DNA of 64,000 bases from positions 1 to 64,000 of IMG/VR virus record IMGVR_UViG_3300022752_000015, one strand, 5' to 3'. The notes beneath the pieces are model-generated. The model was not told where the DNA came from, did no database searches, and saw only the letters and a program-made list of their open reading frames with translations. The position numbers and the translations under genes are program-made. How positions within the stretch are numbered: the first letter of the stretch is position 1; every line of letters begins with the position of its first letter. Positions 28,814-63,002 of this stretch are shown piece after piece.

Positions 28814-29296
28814 TCAGGTTCCTAACCTGCCTTGATCTACTTCTTCACGTGAAACAACTTCACCTGTCATCTTGTCTACAATCACCTTTGTCGAGCTGGC
28901 GTACATCGGATCACGCTCATATTTTTCCTGAAAACGTGCTTGACCTTCTACATAAGCTGCATTGTCTTGCATCAATTGCTCGACAGCTTGCTTGACAGTT
29001 TTACTAATTCGTTTCAGGTTTTCAAAAACAGCGGATATTTGTTCAGGTGTATTGCTCTTGTACAAGTCTCCATGAAATTCGTCGTAATTTCCCATTGCAG
29101 AATTGTAAATGTCTTGTAGATCTTTGGGAGTTCCCTTGTAAAACTTGAAAAAACGCATAACGCCGCTTGGGTTATACATCGATTTCTTTAAAGCCAAAAA
29201 TTCTTTGTATGCAGCCATGGAATCGCTTGAACCCGCTGCTGCGCTCTCGACAGTTTCACGAATAATTCTCTTCAGATCTCCTAGACGTATCTTCAT
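28814..29296 (-). CDS. hypothetical protein with N-terminal LKRIIRE helix
   Basis: MKIRLGDLKRIIRETVE. Confidence 0.7.
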   Translation of the reverse strand: MKIRLGDLKRIIRETVESAAAGSSDSMAAYKEFLALKKSMYNPSGVMRFFKFYKGTPKDLQDIYNSAMGNYDEFHGDLYKSNTPEQISAVFENLKRISKTVKQAVEQLMQDNAAYVEGQARFQEKYERDPMYASSTKVIVDKMTGEVVSREEVDQGRLGT

Positions 29297-29324
29297 GTTG
29301 CCTCTTAAACTTGAGTAAATATAA

Positions 29325-30068
29325 TCACGCAAGCAATTGTTCAATAATTTGTGTTGTGTGTTCAGGCCCGGTGGTTTCTATGCACTGAACACCTGTGGTT
29401 TTCACCGCGTAGTCATTTCCTCCTGGGAACAATGCATCTCCAATGAATAACATATCTTCCTTGGCGAAACCTAGGTGTTTCTCGATCTGAGAAATACCGT
29501 ATGCCTTGTCGATACCTTTTCTCGTCACATCAATGGAGGTCGATCCGCCTGCTCTGATGTCGAATTCAGGTATCAGCTGTAACAATTTTTCGATGAGGAT
29601 CAATCTCTTCGAAAAAGTTGGATCCCACTTTTTCTTCTCCGCAACGGGAGCGAGCTGACCCATCGCCGAGAAAGTGACCTGCGTGCCACGGTTCTCGATT
29701 TGATCTCCCCAAAATCTCTTTGGCATGCTAACTCCTGGATCTGCCAAGACTTGTTTGAAAGCTGACATGATCTTTTTTACCTCTACGTCTGTGAGGTCTT
29801 CGCAGTAGACCTGCGACCACTTTTTTCCGTCATGATTGTTGTAGAAACTTGTACCTGATGTCGGGAATAGGTGTAAACGACATGACAGTTCAGAAGTCAA
29901 CCCAAGTTGATTAACTAGTTGCGACTCGAATTGTGGCCATGCACCTCCTGAAATGACAGCAACATCGTAAGAAGCGAGCAAACGCCGCAAGACACCAGAC
30001 ATATCTGATGTTATTCGTGACTTGCTTTCTGCCAACGTACCGTCTAAATCAAAAATGATTATTTTCAT
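29325..30068 (-). CDS. HAD-IIB hydrolase, phosphomannomutase-like
   Basis: DLDGTL, ENRGTQVTFS, GGSTSIDV, FIGDALFPGGND. Confidence 0.85.
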   Translation of the reverse strand: MKIIIFDLDGTLAESKSRITSDMSGVLRRLLASYDVAVISGGAWPQFESQLVNQLGLTSELSCRLHLFPTSGTSFYNNHDGKKWSQVYCEDLTDVEVKKIMSAFKQVLADPGVSMPKRFWGDQIENRGTQVTFSAMGQLAPVAEKKKWDPTFSKRLILIEKLLQLIPEFDIRAGGSTSIDVTRKGIDKAYGISQIEKHLGFAKEDMLFIGDALFPGGNDYAVKTTGVQCIETTGPEHTTQIIEQLLA

Positions 30069-30100
30069 GACGGAATTAAATAGGCGAGAGTTCGCTAAAA

Positions 30101-30682
30101 TCAGCTACGAATGTATTTCTTGATGACATGTCGACCAGTTCTCTCCTGTGGCGGGACAAAGTCCATCTCAAGAAGGTCAAAGAAATCCTGTTCTTCAGGA
30201 ATCCACAGCTGTTCGCCGGTTGGCATCGTCGGCATGCAGTCGGTCATGCGGCCACCACCAGAGAGCTTCTTCCATCTTGAAAAGATTCCAGGAGTGAAGC
30301 CGTTGAAGGAATTGCCGTCAGGACCCGCACCTGAGCCAGTTCGCATGAGAAAAAGTCCACCCCAGTTCTCAGGAGAAGCCATGAAGAGATCAAGGTTCAT
30401 ACCTTCAGCCAAACGAACTCGTAGGTATTTTGCGGCTGGTTTAGGAGACCATGGAACAACACCTGGCACGCCTGGTTTGATGTGTTGACCCACATCTGAT
30501 AACAAAGAAAGCAAAAGATCTCGTTGCGTAGAGACCGCCACGATCTCGATGTCGCCTACAACTTCTTTTTGGCGACGGATCGATCCTGCGATCTCGCCTC
30601 GATCAAGTGAAGGCATGACGTGATTCAGTACGGAACTTGCGATGGTGTTTGCTTCAAGCAGGTCGATCTTGCCGATACCCAT
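30101..30682 (-). CDS. minimal X-family DNA polymerase (palm and thumb only)
   Basis: AGSIRR...GDIEIV, DLF, RTGS, EEQDFF...PPQER. Confidence 0.8.
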   Translation of the reverse strand: MGIGKIDLLEANTIASSVLNHVMPSLDRGEIAGSIRRQKEVVGDIEIVAVSTQRDLLLSLLSDVGQHIKPGVPGVVPWSPKPAAKYLRVRLAEGMNLDLFMASPENWGGLFLMRTGSGAGPDGNSFNGFTPGIFSRWKKLSGGGRMTDCMPTMPTGEQLWIPEEQDFFDLLEMDFVPPQERTGRHVIKKYIRS

Positions 30683-30694
30683 ACCAACATGGTA

Positions 30695-30886
30695 TCAAAG
30701 GATCTTTACGATTTGCACAGAAGATTCTTCTTGCGAATTTTCTGTAAGATTCTTTTTAGAATATGGACAATTACGACAGCGAGAGTTGCAACAGTAGCCA
30801 CGTTTCAAAAGAAATTCTTTCGTAAAAACCATCTTGTTGCTTTCCATGACGTAATCTACGCCTTCAACAAGACTTATCTTGGTCAA
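30695..30886 (-). CDS. DUF5522-like small Cys protein
   Basis: KMVFTKEFLLKRGYCCNSRCRNCPY. Confidence 0.75.
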   Translation of the reverse strand: MTKISLVEGVDYVMESNKMVFTKEFLLKRGYCCNSRCRNCPYSKKNLTENSQEESSVQIVKIL

Positions 30887-31143: not shown

Positions 31144-31152
31144 AAGTTTTGA

Positions 31153-31404: not shown

Positions 31405-31431
31405 TAAATAAAAATTTAACTGAGATTTTTT

Positions 31432-32676: not shown

Positions 32677-32681
32677 TTCCT

Positions 32682-33815: not shown

Positions 33816-34709
33816 TTATTCTTTGGCGCTGATGCCGATCATCGCAGCAATTTTCTTTATTTCTTCAGAGTATCTGGCGGGTAATCCTTTTTTAGACATT
33901 ATATCAGAAGTTGAAATCCCTTTTTCCTTCATCTGACCAACTATCTTATCTCTTTCTTGCTTCAAAGTTTTGATTGAAGTCATGAAAATTTGATGTTTAC
34001 CAGCTTCTAAAATCTTTTCTTCCGCTTGCTTTTTCTCTGCTTCAGGTTTTTCCGACAGCTCAGCTGACATCTTGTCTATTGTCTCTTTCGGTGCATTCAG
34101 CTGTTGCAAGTTCTTTGCAGATTTAACTTTTGAAAGATCATTTTTGATCTTACCGAAATATCTATCGACGGCTGCATGAGCTTTTTCGACCAGCTCAGCA
34201 GGAACCTGCGGTAATTTTTGCTTTTTTCCTGCGTCTTCCTCACGCTCTAACAAGACAGAGTTACTTTTTCTTACATTTTCCAGCGCGGCTTTTGCCGTCA
34301 TCACGGCCGCTGGGTTATATAAAAAACCGATTGCGACTAAATCGCTAGCCAGCAAAGCTTTTATACCGGCCGATCTTGCACCTTCATACTCACTTCTTAT
34401 CTTCGATATTTCATTGTTGTACGCGTCTTTGGCGGCTTGATAATTCGGCTCCCAAGCGCCAGCTGTCAAGAGACCTAATCCTCCGCTAAGAGACACGCGC
34501 ACGAGCCTTTTTGCTCCAGAGAATAGTTCTTTTGCTCTACCTTTCAGGATCTTAAAAATGTCAGTAACAGGGTCTACAAACGCTGTCTTTATGGCCGTCC
34601 CACCAAAGGTACTGCCACCTGACATGTAGGATGACGAATAGTCACCTGACATTTCTTCTGCTAAAATTCGTCTAACGTACTCTCTTAATAATTTATTTTC
34701 TTGCATCAC
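33816..34709 (-). CDS. hypothetical protein with N-terminal LLREYVRRIL helix
   Basis: 297-aa ORF. Confidence 0.75.
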   Translation of the reverse strand: MMQENKLLREYVRRILAEEMSGDYSSSYMSGGSTFGGTAIKTAFVDPVTDIFKILKGRAKELFSGAKRLVRVSLSGGLGLLTAGAWEPNYQAAKDAYNNEISKIRSEYEGARSAGIKALLASDLVAIGFLYNPAAVMTAKAALENVRKSNSVLLEREEDAGKKQKLPQVPAELVEKAHAAVDRYFGKIKNDLSKVKSAKNLQQLNAPKETIDKMSAELSEKPEAEKKQAEEKILEAGKHQIFMTSIKTLKQERDKIVGQMKEKGISTSDIMSKKGLPARYSEEIKKIAAMIGISAKE

Positions 34710-35407: not shown

Positions 35408-36421
35408 ATGCCATATAACAATAGAAAAAACAGCGTAACATTGCTTAGAGAGTACGTAAAACAATTGCTTGAAGTAAAAGTCACTATTAATGACGAAGAA
35501 TTCGAAGTTCCTAATAAAGTCGCAGAAAAAATTAAAGCTCGTATTTTAAAGGCAACAACTAAAGATCGGACATCTCCAGTAGAGCAAGGGTCAAAACCTT
35601 CCGCGAAAGAATCCCAAGATTATGAAAATTTGCTACAAAGCATAGATCGTATCGACCCAGCAGTCTCTGAAAAACTAAAAGGAATTGTAGAAAGCACAAA
35701 CGTGTTAAGAGATGAACTCAAGATTCTACTTTCAAAAAAAGATCCAGTGAAGCTAGAGGCTTCTTTATTTAAGCTGGCTGCAACGCCTGCTAATACGTCA
35801 ATAAATGTACCTGAAGTTTTGCGTGATGTAGCAAGATTGTCTACTAATCCTAAAGCCGGTGGTATGCAAATTGGAGCAGGCGAAATTGTGATTCGTCTGA
35901 TGTTTGAAAACACAAGCGCTGGTGAAAAAAGCAATTCTTTATATGATGTAACAATCAACAATGAACCGTGGCACGTTAAAGCTGGATCTAGAACCGCTGG
36001 AATCAAGATGGGTTCAGCAAAAGGAAAATTGCTTACTAGCACGCCATTCGTACTAAAACTCGTAAGAATGGGTATTTCAGACATTAGCGATTTGACAGAG
36101 TTTGGTCAAAAACAATTCGCAAATCTTCTAAAGAAATGGTCAGATGAATTCAAGAAAAACGACTTGCAAGATTACACGCCGGAAAATATCTACAAAATAA
36201 TCAATGCTGAAGCTATCAAAGCCGCAGTGGGAGATGCAGTAGGCATTGTGTGGTATGAGAATAATTCGTTGTTTTTTGCTACAAAAGATATTATCTCGAT
36301 AGTTGCGACGACGCAAGGTGGAAGAATCGTGGTTTCCGTCGCAGGAAAAGAAAAAATTCTAAGTTTAATCAACTCTCAGCAGCCTGAAAGCGGCAAGGTT
36401 AAAAGAAAGACGAAATTGTAA
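35408..36421 (+). CDS. LLREYV-helix protein with possible degenerate PD-(D/E)XK domain
   Basis: GAGEIVI...YDVTINNEPWHVKA. Confidence 0.6.
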   Translation: MPYNNRKNSVTLLREYVKQLLEVKVTINDEEFEVPNKVAEKIKARILKATTKDRTSPVEQGSKPSAKESQDYENLLQSIDRIDPAVSEKLKGIVESTNVLRDELKILLSKKDPVKLEASLFKLAATPANTSINVPEVLRDVARLSTNPKAGGMQIGAGEIVIRLMFENTSAGEKSNSLYDVTINNEPWHVKAGSRTAGIKMGSAKGKLLTSTPFVLKLVRMGISDISDLTEFGQKQFANLLKKWSDEFKKNDLQDYTPENIYKIINAEAIKAAVGDAVGIVWYENNSLFFATKDIISIVATTQGGRIVVSVAGKEKILSLINSQQPESGKVKRKTKL

Positions 36422-36438: not shown

Positions 36439-36711
36439 TTATTTTTCGTCTTCAACTTTTTCTTTTTTTATAGCAGCTTTTAACTGACGTTTGATGTCAT
36501 TAACAACATTTCTATAATGGGCTCTTTTTTCAGAGCCCTTCTTTTGCTTGTCACGCCAGTACTCAGCTTCTTTCAAACGGCGCTTGAGATCTGAGATGTG
36601 CTTTCTTGATCCCCATTTGGCCTTTTGACCGTCAGATATGTCGGCTTCTCTAATCTTTTTTTCAAGTATTAAAGCAACATATTCAAGCAGAATTTTCTCT
36701 GAATCCTTCAT
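36439..36711 (-). CDS. hypothetical protein with N-terminal LLEYVALIL helix
   Basis: ORF. Confidence 0.65.
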   Translation of the reverse strand: MKDSEKILLEYVALILEKKIREADISDGQKAKWGSRKHISDLKRRLKEAEYWRDKQKKGSEKRAHYRNVVNDIKRQLKAAIKKEKVEDEK

Positions 36712-38372: not shown

Positions 38373-39130
38373 AGTTCAATTATACCACCAACGACGGCTT
38401 CGTTCAAAAAGCTGGAACCATGTGTGTAGACTTGTTTGTTACGAGTAACTATACAAGAACCGCCTTTGAATGTCAAATCTCTTTCTTTTCCAACGCGATT
38501 AGAAACGATGATATTTGCATTCGTTTGTTCGGCAAGTTCTACCCATGTATGATCCGGATGACCTACATTCCCACCCCAGTTTGTCAATAATGCTATAGTA
38601 TCAACCGACCCTTTTCTATAGAATCTTTGATCTTCTTTGTAAAACTTGTAACTTTCTCTATAGACATTCATAGCATCTCTACAGATCAAAGCGCCAAGTC
38701 GACCAGCTCTTGTTATAACAACGGGATTAAATGCTTCTGAAGACTCTGCCCACAAATAATCGTTAGCCCAAAGATTGTGTTTTTGAAAATTAGCGCTAAC
38801 GCCATTTGGACCTACGACTACAGCTGAATTATACAGCTTTCCTTCATTCAATTCTACGTATCCGACCACGATGTGACAATTGTACTGTTTAGCTATTGGC
38901 AGAAATGCTTCAGTTTGGTAACCATCTCTAGTTTGCGCACATTGAGAAGCTTCTTGTTTATTGCGCAATACATAACCGCTGATGCACAATTCTGGTAGTA
39001 CCACTACGCTCGCTCCTTTTGCTGCGGCTTCATGAGCAAGATAACGAGCAGTAGAAAGATTCTTTTGTACGTCAAGAATCTTCGGTTCGAATTGTACTGC
39101 AGCGGCTATGGTAGCATTAAACATTTTCAA
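38369..39130 (-). CDS. carbon-nitrogen hydrolase (nitrilase family)
   Basis: LPELCISGY, YNSAVVV, FQKHNL, GALICRD, SNRVG; E-K-C triad. Confidence 0.9.
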   Translation of the reverse strand: MKMFNATIAAAVQFEPKILDVQKNLSTARYLAHEAAAKGASVVVLPELCISGYVLRNKQEASQCAQTRDGYQTEAFLPIAKQYNCHIVVGYVELNEGKLYNSAVVVGPNGVSANFQKHNLWANDYLWAESSEAFNPVVITRAGRLGALICRDAMNVYRESYKFYKEDQRFYRKGSVDTIALLTNWGGNVGHPDHTWVELAEQTNANIIVSNRVGKERDLTFKGGSCIVTRNKQVYTHGSSFLNEAVVGGIIEL

Positions 39131-40077
39131 CGTCCACGCAATCTAGATTCGTTTTTTGCTGTCTCAAGCGTCTTTTTAGCTTTTCTTAAATCTTTATCTA
39201 AAAATTCTCTAAATCCGTCGAGCGTTCTAACTATAGCTGGATTGTCTTTCAACATCTTTACTTCTTGAGGTGTAAGTTCTCCAGTCGAAGATAAAACGTC
39301 GATATAATCTGACATTGATTGTAGAACTAAAATCTCTAAAGTGTCAGGATCAAATAAATCCATCTTAGTTACAAGTTTAGCTTTTTCTAAAGCTTTCTCA
39401 ACGGCTTGTTTTGCACCAGATTCTGCAGCAAATCCTAGCTCTTTTGCAATCTCTTTAAATGAGGAACCACCAACGTCTGTCATCATGACATTCTTACGTC
39501 CTGTCGGTTCTGATTCTGCTTCATCTTCTAAGTCTGACATTTTCATAGTTGAAAATGTTTTTTGAAGCTGCGACTTATTCTTTTCAAATTTTGCTTTTTG
39601 TTCTGCTGGTGTTCCTGATTTACTAGAAACCCCTGGATCTACCTTCGTTACTTGTGGATAAGTAGAAGGATCTACTTTGGGTAGTTCACTCCACAACTTG
39701 TCGGCAGCCATTTGGCGTTTTTCTGACGCTGAAATTTCAGATAATAGTTTTCTAACCGTAGCACGAATAGTTGATTCAACTTGGGTATTCTTCATCTCTT
39801 CACCTTGCTTCTCTAGCGCATCTTTTACAGCTATATAAACAGCGGGAACTTGATCGTCTTCTACGTTGCATATTGTGCGCAAAGCAGATAACAACTCGAC
39901 TTTATTTTGAGGTGTGAAATTAGAATTAGCAGAATTGACCTCGGCAGCATCAGGAGCTACAACGGGACTTATTCTAACAGGCATATTTCCATCTAAATGA
40001 CTATTCGTCGACGGAGAATCTAACATCTCTCTCAAAAACTCTCTCAAAGCAGATTCTGTTATGACAATCGAATTCAT
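39127..40077 (-). CDS. hypothetical protein with LREFLRE and VRKLLSE helices
   Basis: 316-aa ORF. Confidence 0.7.
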   Translation of the reverse strand: MNSIVITESALREFLREMLDSPSTNSHLDGNMPVRISPVVAPDAAEVNSANSNFTPQNKVELLSALRTICNVEDDQVPAVYIAVKDALEKQGEEMKNTQVESTIRATVRKLLSEISASEKRQMAADKLWSELPKVDPSTYPQVTKVDPGVSSKSGTPAEQKAKFEKNKSQLQKTFSTMKMSDLEDEAESEPTGRKNVMMTDVGGSSFKEIAKELGFAAESGAKQAVEKALEKAKLVTKMDLFDPDTLEILVLQSMSDYIDVLSSTGELTPQEVKMLKDNPAIVRTLDGFREFLDKDLRKAKKTLETAKNESRLRGR

Positions 40078-41680: not shown

Positions 41681-41969
41681 TGATCATATTATACAGCGTG
41701 TTATGATCTAGTTCATCAATACGTTCACGACTTCCTGTAAATTTCCTAATTGGTTTTTCTAATTCAGCCTGAGCTCTTTTTAACGCAAGATCTTCCAGCA
41801 TTTTTATTGCTTTTCGATCCTCTGTAACAATCAACATCGCAAATTCATCAAAAACAGATTGTATAGACAACTGGTAAGCGAATAATTTTTCTCTTAGACG
41901 TAGATGAACATCTTTCTTCAATTTAACATGAATGCATTTTCTATCATGCAAAATGTCAGTTCTGATCAA
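41631..41969 (-). CDS. hypothetical protein, possible ribbon-helix-helix
   Basis: KCIHVKLKKDVH.LR. Confidence 0.55.
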   Translation of the reverse strand: MIRTDILHDRKCIHVKLKKDVHLRLREKLFAYQLSIQSVFDEFAMLIVTEDRKAIKMLEDLALKRAQAELEKPIRKFTGSRERIDELDHNTLYNMINAEDKRGKRKKEDESA

Positions 41970-42508
41970 GCACCACCTCCAGATGGTCCCATAGCTCTAT
42001 CGGCTGGCGGTGCTGGGAATTTCGAAAATTTTTCTTCTGATTGATTTTTGCCAACTTCTATATCGTACTGTTCTTCTAATATTTCTTTAAATGATTGTAT
42101 GACGCTCGAATCATAACTCTTTGATAAGAAATTTATGGCTCTACGAACCACAGTGTCTCTTACCTCTAAAAGAGAATCGTAGTTATCAATTAAACGAACT
42201 ACACTGTTTGTAAAGGATTCTAGATCTATATCATCGATTGTGAGATCAGATGGAACTTCTTGAACTTTATCATCTTTTTCTTCTTTGTCATCTTCTGCTT
42301 CTAACAGAAAATTTCTCGTCATAATTTTGAAATCAAATCCTTCTTTTTTAACAGAAGTCGCTTCTTTTTCATATTTGGCGAAGTAAGAGTCTATTTGCGA
42401 ATCTAAAGAGTCTTCCGATTCTACTTTAGAAGATTTGCTTTTCTCCTCGAGCAAATGAGATACGCTATCTTTAATAATCTTTTTCAACTCTTTTAAATGA
42501 ATTTTCAT
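41966..42508 (-). CDS. hypothetical protein with N-terminal LKKIIKD helix
   Basis: MKIHLKELKKIIKDSVS. Confidence 0.7.
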   Translation of the reverse strand: MKIHLKELKKIIKDSVSHLLEEKSKSSKVESEDSLDSQIDSYFAKYEKEATSVKKEGFDFKIMTRNFLLEAEDDKEEKDDKVQEVPSDLTIDDIDLESFTNSVVRLIDNYDSLLEVRDTVVRRAINFLSKSYDSSVIQSFKEILEEQYDIEVGKNQSEEKFSKFPAPPADRAMGPSGGGA

Positions 42509-43233
42509 TTTAATACCTGCGCAATTTGCTCGGCTTTCTTAACTCTCTCTTCAACAACATTCCAATTAATTTCTCTCATTTGAGAAACTATATAGCTCTG
42601 TTTGTCGTTCAAGTAATCGCGATAAGCATGTTCCCAAACGTCTAGAACGATCACTGGATATATACCCAACATAACATTAGCGTCATGACTTCCGACGAAC
42701 GTATTCACATATCGTTGCAAAAACATGTGATATCCGCAAACAGCCCAACCAACTCCGGCTGAGTTTGAACATGCTATGAAATCTCTTTGCCAGTCTTCAA
42801 ACGTGCCGAAATCTCGTTCCAATCGTAGATAAGACAAAGAATCCATTGTGATCTCAGAATGAGGATCAAAACAATTCGAGAAGTATAACTCGTGAAGCCA
42901 AATCGCGTTCAGGTTATAAACCTCATCTTTTTTCAGAGATTTATACGATGAGTGACGAGGATTAGCGTCTCCACGTTTTGAAGTGTCAAGTTCAGCAGAT
43001 ACTTTGTTGAATGATTCAACGTAGCCCTTGTAGAGATCATAATGAGCATCTTTGGTTTTTTGAGTAACAAACTCAGTTACTTGTTTAAAAACCTTGGGTT
43101 CAGCAACGTAAGATTCATTTATCTGATCTGCTTGAGGCATTAACCCAATAGATGGCGCTTTTTTAGAAATGCTGTCCTTAACAGCTTTTTTTAATAACGA
43201 GTCTATTTTTTGAGGATCTATAAGCTTGTTCAT
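42505..43233 (-). CDS. Fe/Mn superoxide dismutase family protein with N-terminal extension
   Basis: AHYDLYKGYV, LHELYF, DFGTFEDW, GWAV, LDVWEHAY. Confidence 0.88.
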   Translation of the reverse strand: MNKLIDPQKIDSLLKKAVKDSISKKAPSIGLMPQADQINESYVAEPKVFKQVTEFVTQKTKDAHYDLYKGYVESFNKVSAELDTSKRGDANPRHSSYKSLKKDEVYNLNAIWLHELYFSNCFDPHSEITMDSLSYLRLERDFGTFEDWQRDFIACSNSAGVGWAVCGYHMFLQRYVNTFVGSHDANVMLGIYPVIVLDVWEHAYRDYLNDKQSYIVSQMREINWNVVEERVKKAEQIAQVLK

Positions 43234-43237: not shown

Positions 43238-43582
43238 TTACTGCCTCTCGAATTCTTTTACAAATTCATCAAAAGTTACCGTTGTTTCTGCCACGCCATC
43301 TTCTTTTTGGTGAGTTAAAGTGATGGTTTTGTTGGTTGGATTCACGTTTGAAACAGTGTACAAAAGACCCTGCCCCGTTCCTTTTTTACTTTTCACCTTG
43401 AATTCAGGAGATATAACTATCTCTTTTTCTCCCTTGAGTGGAAATTCTACAGACAGATCAGTGTCAGCTTTTTTCTTGTCTTTCTTTTCTAATTTATCTT
43501 TTTCAGGGAGGAAAGACTCTATTTTTTTATTCCACTCTTCTCGTAAAAGTCTTATTACTTCTTTTTCTGTTAATTTTTTCAT
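43238..43582 (-). CDS. hypothetical protein with N-terminal IRLLREE helix
   Basis: MKKLTEKEVIRLLREEW. Confidence 0.65.
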   Translation of the reverse strand: MKKLTEKEVIRLLREEWNKKIESFLPEKDKLEKKDKKKADTDLSVEFPLKGEKEIVISPEFKVKSKKGTGQGLLYTVSNVNPTNKTITLTHQKEDGVAETTVTFDEFVKEFERQ

Positions 43583-50386: not shown

Positions 50387-50916
50387 GCCTCCTTTTTCAA
50401 GAATTTACGAATGGTCTCCATTTCCCATTCTAGGTTTTCAGAATCAATGCAAAAGCGTAATACGTCACATTTGGTCCACTTTGCAAATTCTTCATACATG
50501 TCTGACAATTTTTGTAGATGATATTCACCTATGTTATGAATATCGTCTTTTAGACCAGAATAAGAAGTCCTATACGGAATGACTATCTTAACGCCAAAAG
50601 AAGCTGCAAGAAAATCAATATGAGACAGAGCATCATGATCGGTCTTTCTATCATAAACTCTTGAATACACCCATTCGGAAGGATACGATCGATCAAGAAT
50701 AACAGACGTCTTGGTGTCTCGAAGAAAAGTGTAGAAGTAAGGGTCTCCATATCGAAGAGCCTTCACGAAATAATCTGGATCTGAGCTAAATGCTTTCCAT
50801 TCTGATTTGTTCTTGAAATATGGAATCTCCATTCGTCTCGAAAGCTCACGAGCCATTTCGGTCTTGCCAACCTTGTCACATCCTTCGAAAATTACGATAG
50901 TGTTCATGTTATTCAT
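50383..50916 (-). CDS. thymidylate-kinase-like dNMP kinase
   Basis: IFEGCDKVGKT P-loop; ILDRSYPSEWVY. Confidence 0.85.
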   Translation of the reverse strand: MNNMNTIVIFEGCDKVGKTEMARELSRRMEIPYFKNKSEWKAFSSDPDYFVKALRYGDPYFYTFLRDTKTSVILDRSYPSEWVYSRVYDRKTDHDALSHIDFLAASFGVKIVIPYRTSYSGLKDDIHNIGEYHLQKLSDMYEEFAKWTKCDVLRFCIDSENLEWEMETIRKFLKKEA

Positions 50917-55539: not shown

Positions 55540-55688
55540 GCTTCGTTCTACCTTAACCTGATGTTATTATATATAACCGCATCTGGCAAAAAAAATCACA
55601 TGATTTGTGCAGCTATCAAACGCCCCATAGGCGACTGCGGGAAGCAGTTCTTTTTCCAAATTTCTTATAAGGAGGTATATTTATCGAC

Positions 55689-56159
55689 ATGAGAGCAAAA
55701 GACTATCTAGCAGAAACATTTGGAGAACCCATAGGAAGTTACGCAGGTAACGCACCAACGGGTGTGATGGACACAAGAGAAGCAGGAATGCCATGCGAAG
55801 AGTGTGGCATGATGTCGCAATCAGTCGAGTCAGATTGTGGTTGCGGTGGAATGGAATCTGAAATGTGTGGAATGTGTGGAATGCCTGCCGATCAATGTTC
55901 ATGCGAACAAGCTTCAGTTTGCCCTATGTGCGGTATGATGCCTTTAGAGTTAGAAGGGCCATGCACATGTGCAATGACAGAAGCAAAAAAAGGACCTTCT
56001 AAATCAACAGCAAAAAAAATATTGAAAGGCGCAGTAACCGCAACAGAAAAAGCAAAAAAAGTTGATAGTTGGGCTACGAATCCTTGGGCCGCAGCAAATT
56101 GGATGTCAAAGCAAGCAGGCGTTCCATTTCACGGAAAAAAGAAGAAAAAGAAAAAGTGA
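55689..56159 (+). CDS. Cys/Met-rich putative metal-binding protein with basic tail
   Basis: three CxxCGM...CxC units; GGAGG SD. Confidence 0.65.
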   Translation: MRAKDYLAETFGEPIGSYAGNAPTGVMDTREAGMPCEECGMMSQSVESDCGCGGMESEMCGMCGMPADQCSCEQASVCPMCGMMPLELEGPCTCAMTEAKKGPSKSTAKKILKGAVTATEKAKKVDSWATNPWAAANWMSKQAGVPFHGKKKKKKK

Positions 56160-56161: not shown

Positions 56162-57229
56162 TCACTTTCCGTGAGGACCATTTTCTTTGACAGCATTTGA
56201 AGTGATACCTAAAAATTTAGCTTTGCTTCTAAACTCTCTAATACTTTTAGCGCCTGAATATGACAGACCTGATTTAATGCCTTCAAGCAGGTCTGTCAAA
56301 GTATCTTGAAGAGAACCTCTGTAAGGGATCAACGTTGACTCTCCTTCAGCAACGGACACCTTACCTCTCCATTCCAATTGCGCTTCTCTTGAAGCCATTC
56401 CGCGAAACTTCTTGTAACGTTGGTTGTCTTTTGTAATGATTGCTCCTGGGGATTCATCATGTCCAGCAAGAACTGATCCTAGCATCACCATGTCCGCTCC
56501 AGCAGCTAGAGCTTTCACTGCATCGCCGCTGTTCCTAATTCCACCATCTGCTACAATGTAAACGTCCCTGTCGGATTTTGCACAATCGATGATTGATTGC
56601 AGCGTTGGAACTCCATGTCCTGTGCGAATTCTCGTTGTACACATGGATCCTCCTCCGACACCGGTACGTATGGAATCAGCACCCCAGTCAGCAAGATCAT
56701 TGAAGGCTTCCAAAGTTGCAACGTTGCCAGTCATTATGTGAATTTTTTTACCAAATTTTACTCTTAGCTTATTTAGAGCATTTTTAACATTCGTGTGGTG
56801 ACCATGCGCAACATCAACGCAGAAAGCCCTACAACCCACGTCATATAGTTCAACTGCTCTTTCAAGATAATCACCCGTCGCACCAACAGCCACCATCAAG
56901 TTCGGGATAAAAGCCGAAGAACTATTGTCACAATCATCAAGCAATAGTTTAGCCGTTTCAAGAAACATCTTTTTAGAATCATCGATTGAACAGTATCGAT
57001 GCAAAACTCCGAAGCCTCCAAGCTTTGCAATGACAGCCGCCGACTGAGGACTTATTACTGTGTCCATAGGAGAACCGACAATGGGACACTTTAATTCTTC
57101 GTGTTTGTCGGTTAAGCTAGCAAAAGCGGAGTCAAATCCAGGCACTGAAAGATCTACATGCGATCTAGACTCTATGTCTGAAAGTTGAGGGACGAGCAGT
57201 ACATCATCGAAGCACAATGAACGTTGCAT
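56162..57229 (-). CDS. IMP dehydrogenase / GMP reductase family (no CBS domains)
   Basis: [42 protein letters not shown]. Confidence 0.93.
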
Positions 57230-57270: not shown

Positions 57271-57828
57271 TCAAAAAAGCTTAACTGCTTCTAAAAAGAA
57301 ATTCTTTTGCAAATTTTCAGGAACTGCTTGTTGCAAAGAAACAGGACAAAATTCATGCCTGTCTACGGCTACATTGTAATGATTTTCTAGATTAGGATTT
57401 TTTTTATCATGTGAATGTCCATGTATTACATGAGACACTTCACCCCAATGAGAATCTTTTACTTTTCTAGAAAAAGCTTCGTGCAACGGATAATGGACAA
57501 GCAAAACGCCTGCTACGTTGATAGAATCGTATACTTTTTTAAACCCTGCATCTAAAAAAAACGAGTCACTATCTTTGTCATGGTTGCCTTTAATAAGAAT
57601 TTTCTTACCCTTTAATCTGTTTATTACATCTCTTAGTTGAATGGAGTCCACGGGACGCAACAATGAAAAATCGCCAAGATGAAAAGTTAAATCATCTTCA
57701 TCTACGAATGAATTCCACGTGTCTATCATGAATTCATTCATTTCGTCGACCGTCTTAAAGGGTCTGTCACAATATTTTATGATGTTCGCATGAAAGTAGT
57801 GAGTGTCAGAACTAAAAAAAATTCTCAT
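57271..57828 (-). CDS. calcineurin-like metallophosphoesterase
   Basis: SDTH, HLGD, KGNHD, HYP, HGHSH. Confidence 0.9.
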   Translation of the reverse strand: MRIFFSSDTHYFHANIIKYCDRPFKTVDEMNEFMIDTWNSFVDEDDLTFHLGDFSLLRPVDSIQLRDVINRLKGKKILIKGNHDKDSDSFFLDAGFKKVYDSINVAGVLLVHYPLHEAFSRKVKDSHWGEVSHVIHGHSHDKKNPNLENHYNVAVDRHEFCPVSLQQAVPENLQKNFFLEAVKLF

Positions 57829-59513
57829 TATGCAAGAATTAATCTTACATATGATTTCAACAGATTTTCACTTTGCGAAACTTTACTTTTTGACAAAGAA
57901 TTCCAAATTGCTAGTTTTGAATCTTCATTCAAAAAATCAGGCAAATTTTTCATGAACTGTTCTCCTTGTCCAGTCGACAAAAATTCTCTCATTTTTGTGC
58001 CAGAAATTCCGCCGGAAGATTCTCTGGGTACCGATCCTGCCACGACTTTTCTCGTTAGATCAATCGCATTTTTTTCATTATTGATTATACCATCGACGCG
58101 ACGGGCAGCATCTTCTGGGTCTCCATAAAGAGTCACTACTGTTTCTTCTGATTGTCTGACTAGGTTGGAGATTGCAGATCTCAGTTCATACATGGGAGAA
58201 ATTCCTTTTGTAAACCTGATGGCAACTTTATCTCCATACGTCTCTTGTATGGCTGGCAAGTAGTAGTTTTTCCACAACGGGACCATGTCAGAAGAACTTA
58301 TTTCGTCTCTTCCTCCAGTAGATACGTACACTAGAATCAATTCATTTCCGTCTGCTTCTGCTGCATCCAATAACGCTTGATGACCTCTGTGGAAAGGTTT
58401 TGCAGCCATAGGAATGACAGCTATCTTTTTGAGTCTATGACCTAAAACGAACAATCTGGTTTTAGCGGTCAGCATTAAATCTTCTTGCTTATTTAAGAGA
58501 GTTTTAACAGGATGATATGCTCCTATGTCTTCTTCAGACATCTCATAAACTCTTGCCGACAAGTCTTTCAACACCTCTTCGGGTCGAGAATCACCCATGA
58601 CAATCTGCAATTCGTCCAGAATTAGATCAGTAGCAGCGTTGATGTCTTCCCAGTATGCTGCTTCTTCTTGCGGGGTACCCTTATACCTAGATTTCTTTTT
58701 CTCTCTTACTTCTTTGCTGTGTTGATCAGCTGCTAAAACTTTATATAGCTGCTTCTCAGACATATCATCACCTTTGACAGTGATGACTACCCCTTCTGAT
58801 TGTCCTCCCAACGAAGATTCCAACGCTTGAAAAGAACTAATAACTCCGCCGAGAATTTCTTGCGGATTTGAAAAATCAACTGTCTCTAGATTTTGTGCGA
58901 ATAATTCTCTAAGTCTCGGATCAAGATGTTCGCTATTTTCAAATATCTCCGCCCTAGAAGACAAATTACCTTCGTAGAGTAGTGGAAAAGAATTTAACTG
59001 TAATATTTCTCTGTACTCTTCTAGTTTAAGAGGATCATCAATAAACGTGGAAGAAGAATAGATTTGCCCCTTTGATGATGCATATACTGCCGGTCCGAAC
59101 CCGACCAAAAACATGCCGTGTTTCTTCGCGTAATCTCTAGTTACAGTAGGTTTATTTTGGACAAATTCTATAAAAAATTCTGTATTGAGAGGAATTGAAG
59201 AAGTTCCTTCATGGACTCTTTTCAAATGATCATACACAAATTTGTATTGAGACGTACCTAACCCAGACGTTTTAATGTCTTTGTCTCTCTTTTCCAATCC
59301 AGAAAATTCCGTAGAATAAATGATATTTCCCTTATACGAAATAATCCAGTTTTTTGTATAGTCACTTGGGTCAAATTGCGCATCATTGCGTATCAAGGTA
59401 AGTTTCGTTCCGTCGATTTTCTCGACAGCCTTGATATGCTTTCTGATAAAATTAGAGGCAGCCTTCGGAGTCTTGACTGCTTTTTTTAGTTCTAGAATTG
59501 AAATATCTAACAT
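57828..59513 (-). CDS. fusion of RNA/DNA-ligase-like nucleotidyltransferase and HIGH-family (NMNAT/cytidylyltransferase-like) domain
   Basis: EKIDG, EFF, EGVV and YK ligase motifs; KPFHRGH and ISGTKMRE. Confidence 0.7.
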   Translation of the reverse strand: MLDISILELKKAVKTPKAASNFIRKHIKAVEKIDGTKLTLIRNDAQFDPSDYTKNWIISYKGNIIYSTEFSGLEKRDKDIKTSGLGTSQYKFVYDHLKRVHEGTSSIPLNTEFFIEFVQNKPTVTRDYAKKHGMFLVGFGPAVYASSKGQIYSSSTFIDDPLKLEEYREILQLNSFPLLYEGNLSSRAEIFENSEHLDPRLRELFAQNLETVDFSNPQEILGGVISSFQALESSLGGQSEGVVITVKGDDMSEKQLYKVLAADQHSKEVREKKKSRYKGTPQEEAAYWEDINAATDLILDELQIVMGDSRPEEVLKDLSARVYEMSEEDIGAYHPVKTLLNKQEDLMLTAKTRLFVLGHRLKKIAVIPMAAKPFHRGHQALLDAAEADGNELILVYVSTGGRDEISSSDMVPLWKNYYLPAIQETYGDKVAIRFTKGISPMYELRSAISNLVRQSEETVVTLYGDPEDAARRVDGIINNEKNAIDLTRKVVAGSVPRESSGGISGTKMREFLSTGQGEQFMKNLPDFLNEDSKLAIWNSLSKSKVSQSENLLKSYVRLILA

Positions 59514-60767
59514 TTATCGACCGAATAAGATGCGTATATACCTGGATATAGATTCTCTTATCTTATACGAAGAATAGTAAGATTGCACCATGGTCGCATC
59601 TGGTTCTGCCAAAAACGGAAACTCTTTTCTAAATCTTCCTACGGCGGCGAGCTTCGAAGATTTATCTACTTCTGCACTTGTCAAATCTAATCCTTGAGCT
59701 TCAGGAGAAAATAGCTTTTCATTAACAAAATCTTCGTAGATATTTTCTATGTCATCGTCTGACATATACATTTTCATTAACGAAAGTATGCCAGAAAAAG
59801 ACTGCAATTTTGTCATGTCATCTGACGACGAAGGAACCTTACCAAACAACAATGTAAATATTTCGTCTATATTTTTTACGTAGCTTGATTCTGCTGTTGA
59901 TAGTTCTCTATAAACGAAAGAATCTCCTAATTTAACAGGTTGACCGATTAGTTCTTTCGGAATATTAGGATCGTCAGGGTATTTCTGCAACTCCACAGTG
60001 GTTCTCAACCCTTGCGAAACAGAAAAAGAGAGCAGCTTAATTGGATCAGATTTCTTCTTAATCTTTATTTTTTCTGGTGGGTATACTAGGCTATTCTTGG
60101 CAAGAATGACTGCATCATTTAGAGTTGATTTTGTCGTTAGAGATCTCAACAAATATTTGTGGAACACGCCTTTTACGCCCTCTTTTACGTCTTCCCAAGC
60201 CGAAGAATGTCCAAATTTCGCAAATGAATCCGGACGGCCCCCAGCATAGTCTACTGATTCAAAATCAACTTGAACGAATACTGGGTCTGCGTCTTTTGTT
60301 TGCCTGTACGCAAACAAAGCATTTATTTGATCTCCTCCGTACTTTTTTCTATTTTGTCCTACATACCAAATTTTCCCAGGTACCACTTCTTTTCCTTCAA
60401 GAGAAGCTAGTAGATCAAATATAGTTTCTATTTTTTCAGCAGGAACTGTCAAGTCAATATCGCCTACCGAAGGCTTAAATTTTGTGAATTCTTTATCCGT
60501 TATTTTATCGTTGAATAGATGTTCAGAAGATCCGTTAAACGCCTCACCGGATGAGAGTAATGAATTTCGTTGTGAACGATCCCAAATAGGAACGCCAAAT
60601 TCATTCTCGTACAACGAATCCAAATTTTTAAAAGCAGTAATGATAGATCTTTTTAGAGAAGAGCGATCTAATTTTTTAAGATCTATTTTGTCTGCATACC
60701 CAGGACGACCAAAGAAGTTTACAACTTCTCCAGTCTCACGATCTATAGCCTTAGTATTACCACCCAT
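59514..60767 (-). CDS. Pol-beta-superfamily nucleotidyltransferase
   Basis: NGSS...VGDIDL...VQVDF. Confidence 0.7.
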   Translation of the reverse strand: MGGNTKAIDRETGEVVNFFGRPGYADKIDLKKLDRSSLKRSIITAFKNLDSLYENEFGVPIWDRSQRNSLLSSGEAFNGSSEHLFNDKITDKEFTKFKPSVGDIDLTVPAEKIETIFDLLASLEGKEVVPGKIWYVGQNRKKYGGDQINALFAYRQTKDADPVFVQVDFESVDYAGGRPDSFAKFGHSSAWEDVKEGVKGVFHKYLLRSLTTKSTLNDAVILAKNSLVYPPEKIKIKKKSDPIKLLSFSVSQGLRTTVELQKYPDDPNIPKELIGQPVKLGDSFVYRELSTAESSYVKNIDEIFTLLFGKVPSSSDDMTKLQSFSGILSLMKMYMSDDDIENIYEDFVNEKLFSPEAQGLDLTSAEVDKSSKLAAVGRFRKEFPFLAEPDATMVQSYYSSYKIRESISRYIRILFGR

Positions 60768-60784
60768 ACGTCGATTCCAGAATG

Positions 60785-61345
60785 TTAGAATGACTCTCTT
60801 TGTACAACACCATCAAGAACCACAAGGCCTGTTCCATTCATGTTAACATCCGTTGGAAGAACTCTCAATTCTAAAGCTATATCTTCAACTGTAACTTTAG
60901 AGCCATTGTACCCGCCTAGGTCTTCCCAAACTTCTCTAATTCGATCGGGGTCAACAGATTGAGATGTCTCAGAAATGAATCCCCAATTGCCTTTCGACCA
61001 TTCTTTAATTTCTCTTGTCGTAATCTTAGAAATAGACTCTGAAATATTTTTTTTCTGATTACTAGATCTAGATTCTTGCTTCAATGTTCCCATCAAATAA
61101 CCATGAACCTGTTGCAGATTTTCATGAGCAACAGAAAGATGATCTTGAACCCAACCCGGGAGTTGATCATCGTCTGCCATGACATCTTGAATATCAGAAG
61201 CCATATTCATCACGGCTGACAAACTAGATTTTACCATTGCACCTTCATCGTCAGGTCCATGTAAAAATCTTTGATTTTCGCCTGATTTTGCAAGAGTAAT
61301 TTCTTCTTTTATGATTCTTCTTAACTGTTCAAATTTAATTTTCAT
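60785..61345 (-). CDS. hypothetical protein with N-terminal LRRIIKEE helix
   Basis: MKIKFEQLRRIIKEEI; LPGWVQDH motif. Confidence 0.7.
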   Translation of the reverse strand: MKIKFEQLRRIIKEEITLAKSGENQRFLHGPDDEGAMVKSSLSAVMNMASDIQDVMADDDQLPGWVQDHLSVAHENLQQVHGYLMGTLKQESRSSNQKKNISESISKITTREIKEWSKGNWGFISETSQSVDPDRIREVWEDLGGYNGSKVTVEDIALELRVLPTDVNMNGTGLVVLDGVVQRESF

Positions 61346-61347
61346 GT

Positions 61348-61908
61348 TTAAACGGCCTGTTTGGAACAACGTTGTTTTAAGAGATAAACATGTCCTTCAT
61401 GTTTGTCTGCAATGCCTTGTAACAAATTATCGATACCGTTTGACAACATTCCACACTCATTCAAAGAAGACATCGCGTGATCAATTACTTTCAAAAAGTT
61501 CAACTCTGCAATCATTGAGCGTTTTGCTAAATCAGTCGATTGCGGAATCGTCATACCTGATCCAACGTTAGAAATGAGTTTTAACATTTGAGAATGAATC
61601 AGCTGAATATTGACGTTGGAAGTTGATCCAAGGCCTATAGCTTTTTCAGCAACTGAATCTACTTCTGCAGAAACGCCTTCGTACAATCGTTGAAAAAGAA
61701 GATGATCGCCGTAGAATGGATCTCCCATGCAAGTCCAGTGATGATTCTGGTGTAGTTCTGCCAAAAATTTTAGATGAACTAAAACAACAGAAAGCTGGCA
61801 ATAAGGAACATTTCCCCACTCAGCCATCATATTTTCTGTAATGATGTTTAAGTTTGGTTCGATCGTCAACATCATGTGTAAAGATTCGGTAATTTTTTTC
61901 TTGCTCAT
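61348..61908 (-). CDS. Dps/ferritin-like protein
   Basis: HQNHHW..G..FYGDHLLFQRLYE...D..AE; HEGHVYLL. Confidence 0.8.
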   Translation of the reverse strand: MSKKKITESLHMMLTIEPNLNIITENMMAEWGNVPYCQLSVVLVHLKFLAELHQNHHWTCMGDPFYGDHLLFQRLYEGVSAEVDSVAEKAIGLGSTSNVNIQLIHSQMLKLISNVGSGMTIPQSTDLAKRSMIAELNFLKVIDHAMSSLNECGMLSNGIDNLLQGIADKHEGHVYLLKQRCSKQAV

Positions 61909-63002
61909 TTTGACCCCAGATAAAATTTGACTTTATTTTGAATCTCTGGATGTGGCGACCAAGAAAGTCTATAGTTGCTTCCTTGAAGCGCTTGCTTATT
62001 GTTCCAATGCTTCACATACGTGTCTAAAGCAATTTCATCCGTAAATCTGGGAGAAGATTGATGAGGTAACATTCCTGACAAGGGAACAGAAATAAATTCC
62101 GCTATACCTTCATTGAGATCATCATCTTTAACCAACTTCGTAATTTTCATAGAAAAAACATCATGAGCTTTTGTGATGTATTCATTAGGTAATGAAGCTG
62201 TTTCTAACAAGCTTTCTACCTGATCATTCTGCTCATCTGATTCTTGAACGTCATATTTAAACGATTCATTAAGCTCTAATTTGTCTCTGCGTTCTTCTTC
62301 GTTGTCAGCCATTATCTCTACAACTTTTTTCATGAGCTTATAAGAGTCTATGTTGTAGCGATTGACGGATCTAGCGGCTGAACAATATTGATTTACCGCT
62401 GCAGAAACCCACCCCGTGTCCAGGGTTCTACCATAGTCTTGTATCAATTTACGGGCTTTTGAATCATACCATGCGTCGCTAAGGAAAGATTCTCCTTCAG
62501 GACTTGACGCAGCAGACTTAAGAGCAGGCTTACTCTCAGTAAGACGCTTTCGTTTTAAGATATCACGTAGGGTGTCATCTGTCGGATATTTTTTGATCGT
62601 CTCTTCAATTAACTTGACGGGAGAGTTTTGCGCGGCGGCGGCTCGAACAAAAGGAACCTTATCATTAATAAATTTGCATGCTAGATGTTCTGGCAACAAT
62701 CTAACAGCCAATCTCCTGATTTCTGGATTCTTGTGATGAGCTACTTTGAGAGCTGCGTTTGCAGAGAACTTTATGTAGTTTCTTCTACCAGTTCTTTCTA
62801 GCACATCCAAACGATCGTTGGCTTGTTCAGACAAAGCCACCACGTCATTTGCAACAATCACAGTCGGTCCAAAGACTCTTTTTATCTCTGAACAAAATTC
62901 TGCCACTGCTTTTTTCTCTTGTACCGTTTCTTCTACGATACGTTGTAAGTCAGTTATCTTCAAACGCATGAATGCAAAACTCCTGTCATAACTATTATCC
63001 AA
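61905..63002 (-). CDS. hypothetical protein with LQRIVEE helix and HEAT-like repeats
   Basis: PEIRRLAV, PFVRAAAA. Confidence 0.65.
   Translation of the reverse strand: MDNSYDRSFAFMRLKITDLQRIVEETVQEKKAVAEFCSEIKRVFGPTVIVANDVVALSEQANDRLDVLERTGRRNYIKFSANAALKVAHHKNPEIRRLAVRLLPEHLACKFINDKVPFVRAAAAQNSPVKLIEETIKKYPTDDTLRDILKRKRLTESKPALKSAASSPEGESFLSDAWYDSKARKLIQDYGRTLDTGWVSAAVNQYCSAARSVNRYNIDSYKLMKKVVEIMADNEEERRDKLELNESFKYDVQESDEQNDQVESLLETASLPNEYITKAHDVFSMKITKLVKDDDLNEGIAEFISVPLSGMLPHQSSPRFTDEIALDTYVKHWNNKQALQGSNYRLSWSPHPEIQNKVKFYLGSK

What the first reader, a model, noticed from the sequence alone, without database searches (positions are those of the whole stretch)
28814..63002. Shared amphipathic 'LRRIIKEE / LLREYVR' helix on a dozen otherwise unrelated proteins: possible packaging tag
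Seen at N-termini: 28814 (LKRIIRE), 30883, 33816 (LLREYVRRILAEE), 35408 (LLREYVKQLLE), 36439, 39127, 41966, 43238, 54586 and 60785 (QLRRIIKEEI), 61905, and the SOD extension (42505). A similar helix ends 57828 (LLKSYVRLIL) and 59514. Established: T4 internal head proteins carry a capsid-targeting leader removed by the prohead protease after Glu. Inference: a portable address label that loads cargo, including enzymes, into the capsid for co-injection.
Basis: partly seen in the sequence, partly recalled or inferred. Interest (0 to 1): 0.6.

Follow-up and report, generated by a model that had tools for sequence, protein, structure and literature searches.

The report
Capsid-loading tag in freshwater jumbo phages
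A 15-residue N-terminal helix that ends in a T4-type protease site is shared by a dozen otherwise unrelated proteins of this T4-related lake jumbo phage. It most likely works like T4's capsid targeting sequence, but it labels far more genes, up to 38 in one relative.

Summary
The core observation is real. Twelve proteins of this 212.8-kb phage record, five of them in the window, begin at their Met with one motif (consensus MKITxxQLRRIIKEE). A model built from the five window copies alone finds the others at 12-26 bits; shuffles reach at most 12. Codons vary synonymously, and the protein bodies are unrelated.

The second flavour (LLREYV...) is weaker: it is kept in orthologues but is not separable from noise on its own. 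The SOD extension, ORF 30883 and the C-terminal copies are not supported.

The genome is a distant T4 relative, with Gp23 capsid protein, Gp20 portal, a gp22-like scaffold and a Peptidase_S77 (gp21) prohead protease. Two conserved small proteins that carry the tag lie between protease and scaffold. The tag ends in [IV]-x-E (87% of 113 tags), which is the gp21 cleavage motif. The capsid protein has L-K-E at the position of T4's L-T-E65 maturation site.

The tag runs through a large uncultured clade: 16 copies in a complete 298-kb genome, 38 in another, and tandem arrays of small acidic ORFans. No cultured phage in the GenBank phage set searched carries it; Flavobacterium phage immuto has a short variant.

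Best reading: a CTS-like propeptide that loads cargo into the prohead core. This is inferred, not shown. It is a new variant of a known kind.

The parts
28814..29296 (-). Tagged protein, 160 aa; type-A tag is residues 1-15 (nt 29252-29296)
   Evidence: HMM 27.9 bits, starts at Met. No credible Pfam family; one sub-threshold DctP hit. A near-identical copy in relative G003, locus L108.
41966..42508 (-). Tagged protein, 180 aa, acidic body; type-A tag with Asp in place of Glu14 (nt 42464-42508)
   Evidence: HMM 27.5 bits. Its orthologue in G001 has a different amphipathic N-terminus. In T4, Asp at the cleavage position blocks processing but not targeting (PMC9026906).
54586..55539 (-). Tagged protein, 317 aa; type-A tag nt 55495-55539
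   Evidence: HMM 29.9 bits. Orthologues that are 28-45% identical in the body keep 13 of 15 tag residues. AF2 predicts a helix at residues 5-22 followed by a disordered linker, at low confidence.
60785..61345 (-). Tagged protein, 186 aa, acidic; type-A tag nt 61301-61345
   Evidence: HMM 27.0 bits. In G001 its orthologue is fused behind another tagged unit, with the second tag internal.
61905..62969 (-). Tagged protein, 354 aa, HEAT/LRV-like repeats (lead only); type-A tag nt 62925-62969
   Evidence: HMM 24.4 bits. Orthologues in G001 and G004 keep the N-terminal motif. The HEAT hit is weak in both Pfam and the Atlas.
33816..34706 (-). Protein, 296 aa, basic; second-class N-terminal helix (LLREYV type), residues 6-18
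   Evidence: Leave-one-out 14.3 bits. The G001 orthologue keeps the helix.
35408..36421 (+). Protein, 337 aa; second-class helix at residues 12-24
   Evidence: Leave-one-out 8.3 bits, marginal. No orthologue was found in G001.
36439..36711 (-). Protein, 90 aa, basic; second-class-like helix at residues 7-19
   Evidence: Leave-one-out 2.8 bits, not significant alone. The orthologue keeps the same pattern. [LI]-x-E density is 4 per 90 aa.
39127..40077 (-). Protein, 316 aa; second-class-like helix at residues 9-21
   Evidence: Not significant alone. The G001 orthologue has the same helix right after its Met.
43238..43582 (-). Protein, 114 aa; divergent type-A-like N-terminus
   Evidence: Below the HMM threshold. 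The N-terminus is conserved in the G001 orthologue.
42505..43233 (-). Fe/Mn superoxide dismutase with an N-terminal extension of about 40-55 aa; not a tag carrier by the model
   Evidence: Pfam Sod_Fe_C at 5e-18; the SOD domains start near residue 56. No tag-model hit. The extension and an [IL]-N-E-S site just before the domain are kept in the G001 orthologue, so a cleavable propeptide is possible but untested.
57828..59513 (-).
   Evidence: 6.4 bits, within noise. The C-terminal 200 aa are homologous to a stand-alone G001 protein with the same ending.

Best explanation
The type-A motif is a capsid-targeting propeptide of the T4 kind.

Proposed steps:
1. The basic amphipathic helix (residues about 3-16) docks the newly made protein onto the prohead core. 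That core is built from the gp22-like scaffold and from two conserved small proteins that carry the same helix.
2. The shell of Gp23-type capsid protein closes around the core.
3. The gp21-type serine protease cuts after Glu14 of the [IV]-x-E site. In lineages with a longer tag it also cuts at a second L-x-E about eight residues on.
4. The tag and the chopped scaffold leave the head. The mostly small, acidic cargo bodies stay with the DNA and enter the host at infection.

Shown here: the motif, its exact N-terminal position, its protein-level conservation, the T4-type head genes, the intact protease catalytic residues, and the position of tagged genes in the head module.

Inferred: docking, cleavage, retention and ejection.

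The LLREYV-type helix may be a second, weaker class of the same device.
For: 1. The motif is far beyond chance and always starts at Met. In the IMG/VR tag loci, 217 of 236 hits start at Met.
2. Selection acts on the peptide. Codons vary synonymously in the window's genome, and third positions carry the most entropy in a 26-copy array. Orthologues keep the tag far better than the body.
3. The head genes are T4-type: Gp23, Portal_T4 and Peptidase_S77 pass Pfam cut-offs. The protease is 35% identical to T4 gp21, with the His85 and Ser140 equivalents kept.
4. [IV]12 is invariant and Glu14 is present in 87% of 113 distinct tags. This matches the gp21 site L/I-x-E and the 10-19-residue length of the T4 CTS (PMC9026906; T4 CTS read).
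5. The capsid protein has L-K-E59 aligned to T4 gp23 L-T-E65. [LI]-x-E is about 2-fold enriched in the scaffold and 2.7-fold in the 289-aa core-module protein, but not in cargo bodies.
6. Two tagged families (about 141 and 80 aa) lie between protease and scaffold. In 45 of 46 related loci with enough upstream DNA, at least one tagged gene lies within 5.2 kb upstream of the capsid gene.
7. Four further tag-bearing genomes, found through the tag alone, all encode Peptidase_S77.
8. The extended part of the cargo tags differs between two lineages in step with the tag of the head-module 80-aa protein.
9. Across 106 tagged proteins from relatives, the bodies fall into 41 unrelated clusters. This is the pattern of an address label, not of a functional domain.
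Against: - There is no experimental datum for this clade: no virion proteome, no N-terminal mapping.
- The tag has no detectable sequence similarity to the T4 CTS, and the model finds nothing in T4.
- Cargo bodies are mostly acidic (89%, median net charge -6). This differs from the T4 internal proteins, which I recall as mainly basic (my own knowledge, not checked here).
- Many tagged genes sit among replication and nucleotide-metabolism genes rather than with structural genes.
- The docking job with the putative scaffold gave no answer.
- One window copy has Asp instead of Glu14.
- The shared TATATATA box seen upstream of three tagged genes is not reproduced in a relative, so co-regulation with head genes is not shown.
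Confidence: 0.6

Rival explanations
1. The helix is a core-building element rather than a cargo label. On this reading, all tagged proteins are expendable filler or size-determining parts of the prohead core (like T4 gp67 and gp68). They co-assemble through the shared helix, are degraded by the protease and are expelled before DNA packaging. Nothing is delivered to the host.
For: The two best-conserved tagged families lie in the head module next to the protease and have about the sizes of T4 gp68 and gp67 (141 and 80 aa). Cargo tags track the tag of these proteins between lineages. Acidic bodies would be repelled by DNA.
Against: Cargo bodies are not enriched in [LI]-x-E (observed/expected about 1.0-1.3), whereas the scaffold (2x) and the 289-aa core protein (2.7x) are. 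Forty-one unrelated and rapidly changing bodies, including a DnaJ+WGR protein and a PAP2 protein, are hard to explain as filler.
Confidence: 0.15
2. The helix is an address or binding module for something other than the capsid. For example, it could be a peptide that docks on a host or phage machine (polymerase, chaperone, protease adaptor), or an in-plane membrane anchor. The variable bodies would then act as effectors inside the infected cell.
For: A conserved N-terminus on variable small ORFans arranged in arrays is also the pattern of effector families. Many tagged genes lie among early-type genes. One carrier is a J-domain protein.
Against: This does not explain why the same tag heads two conserved proteins between prohead protease and scaffold in 45 of 46 loci. 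It also does not explain why the tag ends in the protease motif in 87% of copies. The helix is too charged for a Sec or Tat signal and has no hydrophobic core (logo).
Confidence: 0.15
3. The shared N-terminus is a leftover of common descent or a nucleotide-level signal, with no addressing role for the peptide. Possible forms are a translation-initiation region, a binding site for a translational repressor, or a recombination hotspot.
For: In one pair of genes from different samples, DNA identity (about 80%) is confined to the 54-nt tag while both flanks are unrelated. Codon choice in one array is partly uniform.
Against: Leu8 uses four or five codons and Arg9 three. Third positions are the most variable while the residues are invariant. 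The motif persists in genomes whose capsid proteins are only 37% identical. Bodies share no similarity, so plain paralogy is excluded.
Confidence: 0.05

Closest known systems
T4 capsid targeting sequence (CTS) of internal proteins IPI, IPII, IPIII and Alt (Mullaney and Black 1996; reviewed in PMC9026906 and PMC3012670)
   Same: A short propeptide at the extreme N-terminus, starting M-K and ending in hydrophobic-x-Glu. It is shared by proteins whose mature parts are unrelated, in a phage with gp20, gp21, gp22 and gp23 homologues. The carrier genes are variable between relatives.
   Different: There is no detectable sequence similarity to T4's ten-residue CTS. The tag here is 15-22 residues and strongly basic. 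It also heads conserved head-module proteins, which T4 gp67 and gp68 do not share with the IPs. There are 12-38 carriers per genome against about four in T4, and some lineages have back-to-back arrays of up to 31 genes. The bodies are mostly acidic. Function is untested.
Propeptides of inner-body and ejection proteins of phiKZ, 201phi2-1 and SPN3US giant phages (PMC5694885, PMC9026906)
   Same: Jumbo phages with a gp21-related protease that cuts after Glu. Many head proteins are processed, and propeptides are proposed to target proteins into the prohead. Paralogues gp53 and gp54 of SPN3US share an identical 15-residue N-terminus.
   Different: Those propeptides are mostly longer than 100 residues, the motif is A/S-x-E, and there is no single shared leader across dozens of unrelated proteins. 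The present phage has a T4-type head module. Features of phiKZ-like phages such as virion RNA polymerase genes were not searched for.
Encapsulin cargo-loading peptides
   Same: A short portable peptide that directs unrelated cargo into an HK97-fold shell.
   Different: In the usual cases they are C-terminal and bind the shell protein directly. As far as I know they are not removed by a protease, and the compartment is not a virus (my own knowledge). There is no sequence relation.
Flavobacterium phage vB_FspM_immuto (MW353176), the nearest cultured relative that has a similar device
   Same: A T4-type head module with the same gene order. A 73-aa protein in that module and three other proteins start with a shared shorter motif (M-K-K-S-Q, then hydrophobic-x-Glu).
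   Different: Only about four carriers. The motif is five residues shorter at the front. I searched for no virion proteome of this phage.

Membership tests
T4-type capsid targeting sequence / internal-protein system | Short (10-20 aa) leader at the extreme N-terminus, shared by proteins with unrelated mature parts | tested here: met
   Twelve carriers in this genome, all starting at Met, with bodies unrelated by blastp. In relatives, 106 carriers fall into 41 body clusters.
T4-type capsid targeting sequence / internal-protein system | Leader ends in the gp21 cleavage motif L/I-x-E | tested here: met
   [IV]12 in 100% and Glu14 in 87% of 113 distinct tags. Motif definition from PMC9026906. Val at P3 is a conservative extension of L/I.
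T4-type capsid targeting sequence / internal-protein system | Genome encodes a gp21-family prohead serine protease with catalytic His and Ser | tested here: met
   Pfam Peptidase_S77, 99 bits against a cut-off of 27. 35% identity to T4 gp21, with His85 and Ser140 equivalents conserved. The identity of the catalytic residues is from my memory of Cheng et al. 2004.
T4-type capsid targeting sequence / internal-protein system | T4-type prohead: gp20 portal, gp22 scaffold core, gp23 shell with an N-terminal propeptide | tested here: met
   Portal_T4 and Gp23 pass Pfam cut-offs. L-K-E59 aligns with T4 L-T-E65. The scaffold is assigned only by position, composition, cleavage-site density and N-terminal resemblance to relatives.
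T4-type capsid targeting sequence / internal-protein system | Sequence homology of the leader to the T4 CTS | tested here: not met
   The tag model finds nothing in the T4 genome or its head proteins. Only the first two residues and the terminal hydrophobic-x-Glu agree.
T4-type capsid targeting sequence / internal-protein system | Carriers are found in proheads and virions, lose the leader in vivo and are ejected into the host | not testable with these tools
   No proteomic data. The docking job gave no answer.
T4-type capsid targeting sequence / internal-protein system | Leader alone suffices to package a foreign protein | not testable with these tools
   Needs a cultured host-phage pair.
phiKZ-like inner-body propeptides | Long (>100 aa) propeptides with an A/S-x-E site | tested here: not met
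   The tag is 15-22 aa and the P3 residue is Ile or Val. Features compared against PMC5694885.
Sec or Tat signal peptide | Hydrophobic core of 10 or more residues after a basic N-region | tested here: not met
   The logo shows charged residues alternating with single or paired hydrophobics and no hydrophobic stretch. Judged by inspection only; no signal-peptide predictor was available.

The most novel reading that the evidence does not exclude
The tag defines the largest predicted repertoire of packaged and injected phage proteins known. That means dozens of cassettes per genome, arranged in back-to-back arrays that diversify quickly, with the body replaced while the tag is kept. They would be loaded by mimicking the N-terminus of the phage's own core proteins, and would serve as a pre-made, co-injected anti-defence arsenal of small acidic (possibly DNA-mimicking) proteins in widespread freshwater jumbo phages.
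Probability: 0.3. Interest if true: 0.8.

Novelty: new variant of a known kind. Interest (0 to 1): 0.62.

Why it matters
If the tag works as proposed, a simple sequence rule predicts which proteins of a whole uncultured clade of lake and other aquatic jumbo phages travel inside the capsid and reach the host first. That is 12 to at least 38 proteins per genome, almost all of unknown function. It turns a list of ORFans into a defined candidate set of ejected proteins, which are prime suspects for anti-defence and host-takeover roles. It would also show that the T4 CTS principle is old and general in the T4 superfamily rather than a T-even peculiarity. The sharing of one tag between core proteins and cargo suggests how loading might work. 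A short, conserved, protease-removable packaging tag is also a practical tool for loading foreign proteins into phage heads.

Tried and rejected
- Docking of the putative scaffold (646 aa) with a 99-aa tagged protein: no answer (score 0.00). This is neither support nor evidence against.
- AlphaFold2 of the 317-aa carrier with a three-sequence alignment: mean pLDDT 49.5, too poor for a fold search, so none was run.
- Pfam and PHROGs on carriers: no credible family. The only hits were sub-threshold (DctP, a poxvirus repeat, HEAT). The Atlas look-alike search for the 354-aa carrier gave HEAT/LRV repeats at 0.85, a lead only.
- T4-type late promoter TATAAATA: not found upstream of structural or tagged genes.
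- TATATATA occurs at only three sites in 212 kb, all 23-36 nt upstream of tagged genes. In the complete relative only 1 of 3 sites shows this, so it is not used as evidence.
- Type-B motif: the leave-one-out test was weak, and an IMG/VR scan recovered only the near-identical genome.
- tblastn of an array member against 50,697 GenBank phage records: no cultured phage has the tag.
- Laying contigs of four lake and river metagenomes on 58001-64000: colinear and near-identical, with no information on the tag.
Both aims were then met by reference (alignment A5; seeds taken by coordinates).
- The large profile search of 1.84 billion proteins was not run. An 18-residue motif cannot reach significance there, and the operators asked for restraint.


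Full report
**What the window is.** The window is the first 64 kb of a 212,804-bp IMG/VR virus record, estimated 59% complete. It has no close match among 50,697 GenBank phage records. Its DNA, or near-identical DNA, occurs in lake, river and other freshwater metagenomes from at least 15 studies. A 278-kb IMG/VR contig is 99% identical over one gene.

Outside the window the record carries a T4-type head module. Its gene order is large terminase, Portal_T4 portal, a 289-aa protein, a Peptidase_S77 prohead protease, 141-aa, 78-aa and 164-aa proteins, a 646-aa acidic coiled protein, and a Gp23-family capsid protein. The protease is 35% identical to T4 gp21 and keeps the residues aligned with His85 and Ser140. 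The capsid protein aligns with T4 gp23 through the propeptide, and L-K-E59 falls on T4's L-T-E65 maturation site. The phage is therefore a distant member of the T4 superfamily. It replicates with a DnaE-type polymerase.

**Checking the observation.** Translating the listed ORFs showed that most coordinates are the low ends of minus-strand genes, and that two motif classes had been merged.

Class A (consensus MKITxxQLRRIIKEE):
- It begins exactly at a Met preceded by a Shine-Dalgarno-like run.
- Five copies lie in the window, with Met at 29296, 42508, 55539, 61345 and 62969. Seven more lie elsewhere in the genome.
- A model made from the five window copies scores five non-seed copies at 12.1-25.9 bits, and a sixth (Met at genome 192658) at only 8.9. 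Twenty shuffles of all six-frame ORFs reach 5.3-12.2, and reversed sequences reach 6.7.
- A copy that was never a seed (205897) scores 16.8 bits.
- Conserved residues are written with several synonymous codons.
- The parts behind the tag share no blastp similarity.

Class B (LLREYV type):
- Three of its five members fail a leave-one-out test.
- The helix is nevertheless kept right after the Met in orthologues from a 298-kb relative.
- An IMG/VR scan found it only in the near-identical genome.

Not supported by the models: ORF 30883, the SOD extension and the two C-terminal helices. One C-terminal case is plain homology of a whole domain.

**How far the tag reaches.**
- The capsid protein has more than 600 relatives in IMG/VR at 65-85% identity.
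- Tag counts in related genomes: 16 in a complete 297,894-bp genome with terminal repeats (16 at 13.5 bits or more; 17 matches at E of 1 or less), about 21 in a 211-kb fragment, and 19 in the 484-kb uncultured phage LR756508.1, whose capsid protein is only 37% identical.
- A scan of IMG/VR with a five-sequence tag alignment matched 338 stretches, of which 146 were confirmed.
- In the 78 loci fetched, 217 of 236 model hits start at Met, and many loci hold runs of tagged genes.
- One 201-kb genome (73% complete) has 38 matches. Thirty-one lie in one 18-kb stretch, mostly stop-to-start, with bodies unrelated to one another.
- All four genomes reached through the tag alone encode Peptidase_S77.
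- Over 113 distinct tags, Met1, Leu8 and [IV]12 are invariant, [RK]9 is 98% and Glu14 is 87%.
- Tagged proteins are small (median 106 aa) and 89% of them are acidic.
- Of 30 cluster representatives, only a DnaJ+WGR protein and a PAP2 protein have Pfam domains.
- No cultured phage in the GenBank phage set searched has the tag. T4 has no match. Flavobacterium phage immuto has a shorter variant on four proteins, one of them in its head module.

**What it most likely is.** In T4, the internal proteins and Alt carry 10-19-residue N-terminal capsid targeting sequences. These bind the scaffolding core and are removed by gp21 after the motif L/I-x-E. The mature parts are diverse, and foreign proteins can be packaged with the leader alone (PMC9026906, PMC3012670, PMC5694885). 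I read the T4 leader from the T4 record.

The tag here has the same position, the same start (M-K), a comparable length and the same ending, in a genome with the same head machinery. Four further points tie it to the head:
- Two conserved tagged families lie between protease and scaffold. In 45 of 46 related loci with enough upstream DNA, at least one tagged gene lies within 5.2 kb upstream of the capsid gene.
- [LI]-x-E is enriched about 2-fold in the 646-aa scaffold candidate and 2.7-fold in the 289-aa protein, as expected for proteins that are chopped up. It is near expectation in cargo bodies, as expected for proteins trimmed only at the leader.
- Orthologues with 28-45% body identity keep 13 of 15 tag residues.
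- Where the tag is extended by a second L-x-E in one lineage, the head-module 80-aa protein shows the same extension. This rests on two lineages only.

**What is not shown.**
- Docking, cleavage, retention in the virion and ejection are all inferred.
- The single complex prediction returned no answer, and the only fold attempt was of low confidence.
- The tag has no measurable sequence similarity to the T4 leader. Homology of the device is therefore open, although analogy of function is the best reading.
- The acidity of the bodies, and the position of many carriers among replication genes, are differences from T4 that a core-filler model or a non-capsid address could also accommodate.
- A nucleotide-level explanation is unlikely, given the synonymous variation. 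In one pair of genes from different samples, however, DNA identity is confined to the tag, which hints that the tag also serves as a recombination joint.

**Verdict.** The device is a new variant of a known kind: a CTS-like leader with a new sequence, shared with core proteins, used by many more genes and organised in arrays, in an abundant uncultured clade.

Noticed in passing
window 2900-14800, minus strand: A tandem run of roughly 30 small genes (57-107 aa). Many of them begin with a similar short N-terminal pattern (Met, basic residue, x, Gly-Asp/Ser-Leu-hydrophobic). It looks like one large paralogous family. Two members gave no Pfam hit.
   Followed up: partly
window 55568-55575; genome 66610-66617 and 205913-205920: The octamer TATATATA occurs at only three sites in 212.8 kb, each 23-36 nt upstream of a tagged gene. 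In the complete relative only one of three sites lies upstream of a tagged gene. It may be a promoter element or chance.
   Followed up: partly
L096:12342-13265 (G001, minus strand) and L198:8297-9952 (G006): Single ORFs that hold two tags. The second tag is internal and is followed by a body that is a separate tagged gene in other genomes; in G001 it is the orthologue of window 60785-61345. These are either gene fusions that a protease could resolve into two proteins, or assembly errors.
   Followed up: partly
window 42505-43233, minus strand: A phage-encoded Fe/Mn superoxide dismutase with an N-terminal extension of about 40-55 residues. An [IL]-N-E-S site just before the enzyme domain is conserved in the 298-kb relative. 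The enzyme might be a protease-processed head protein even though it lacks the tag.
   Followed up: partly
window 50909-54502 and 56162-57229, minus strand: The phage has a bacterial-type DNA polymerase III alpha subunit (PHP, NTPase, finger and HHH domains) and an IMP dehydrogenase/GMP reductase family protein. This is an unusual pairing with a T4-type head.
   Followed up: no
genome 97885-107321 and 113660-116065 (outside the window): Three consecutive paralogous proteins of about 1020 aa with sheath-like N-termini, and two adjacent paralogues of about 397 aa that are near-identical at their N-termini. They were not annotated further.
   Followed up: no
genome about 205400-212800 (outside the window): The last 7 kb of the record has ORFs rich in Arg, Pro and Ala on both strands, and gene calls there are ambiguous. 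This is unlike the rest of the genome and could be an assembly chimera or a different kind of region. One tagged gene (205897, minus strand) lies at its edge.
   Followed up: no
L119:398-1003 (ENA contig) compared with window 55400-55700: A 201-aa protein from another sample has the same first 18 residues as the window's 317-aa carrier but an unrelated body. DNA identity (about 80%) is limited to the 54 nt that encode the tag. This suggests body swapping at the tag boundary.
   Followed up: partly
window 20966-22972, plus strand: A 668-aa protein with a sub-threshold bactofilin-like stretch (27.0 bits against a cut-off of 27.9).
   Followed up: no
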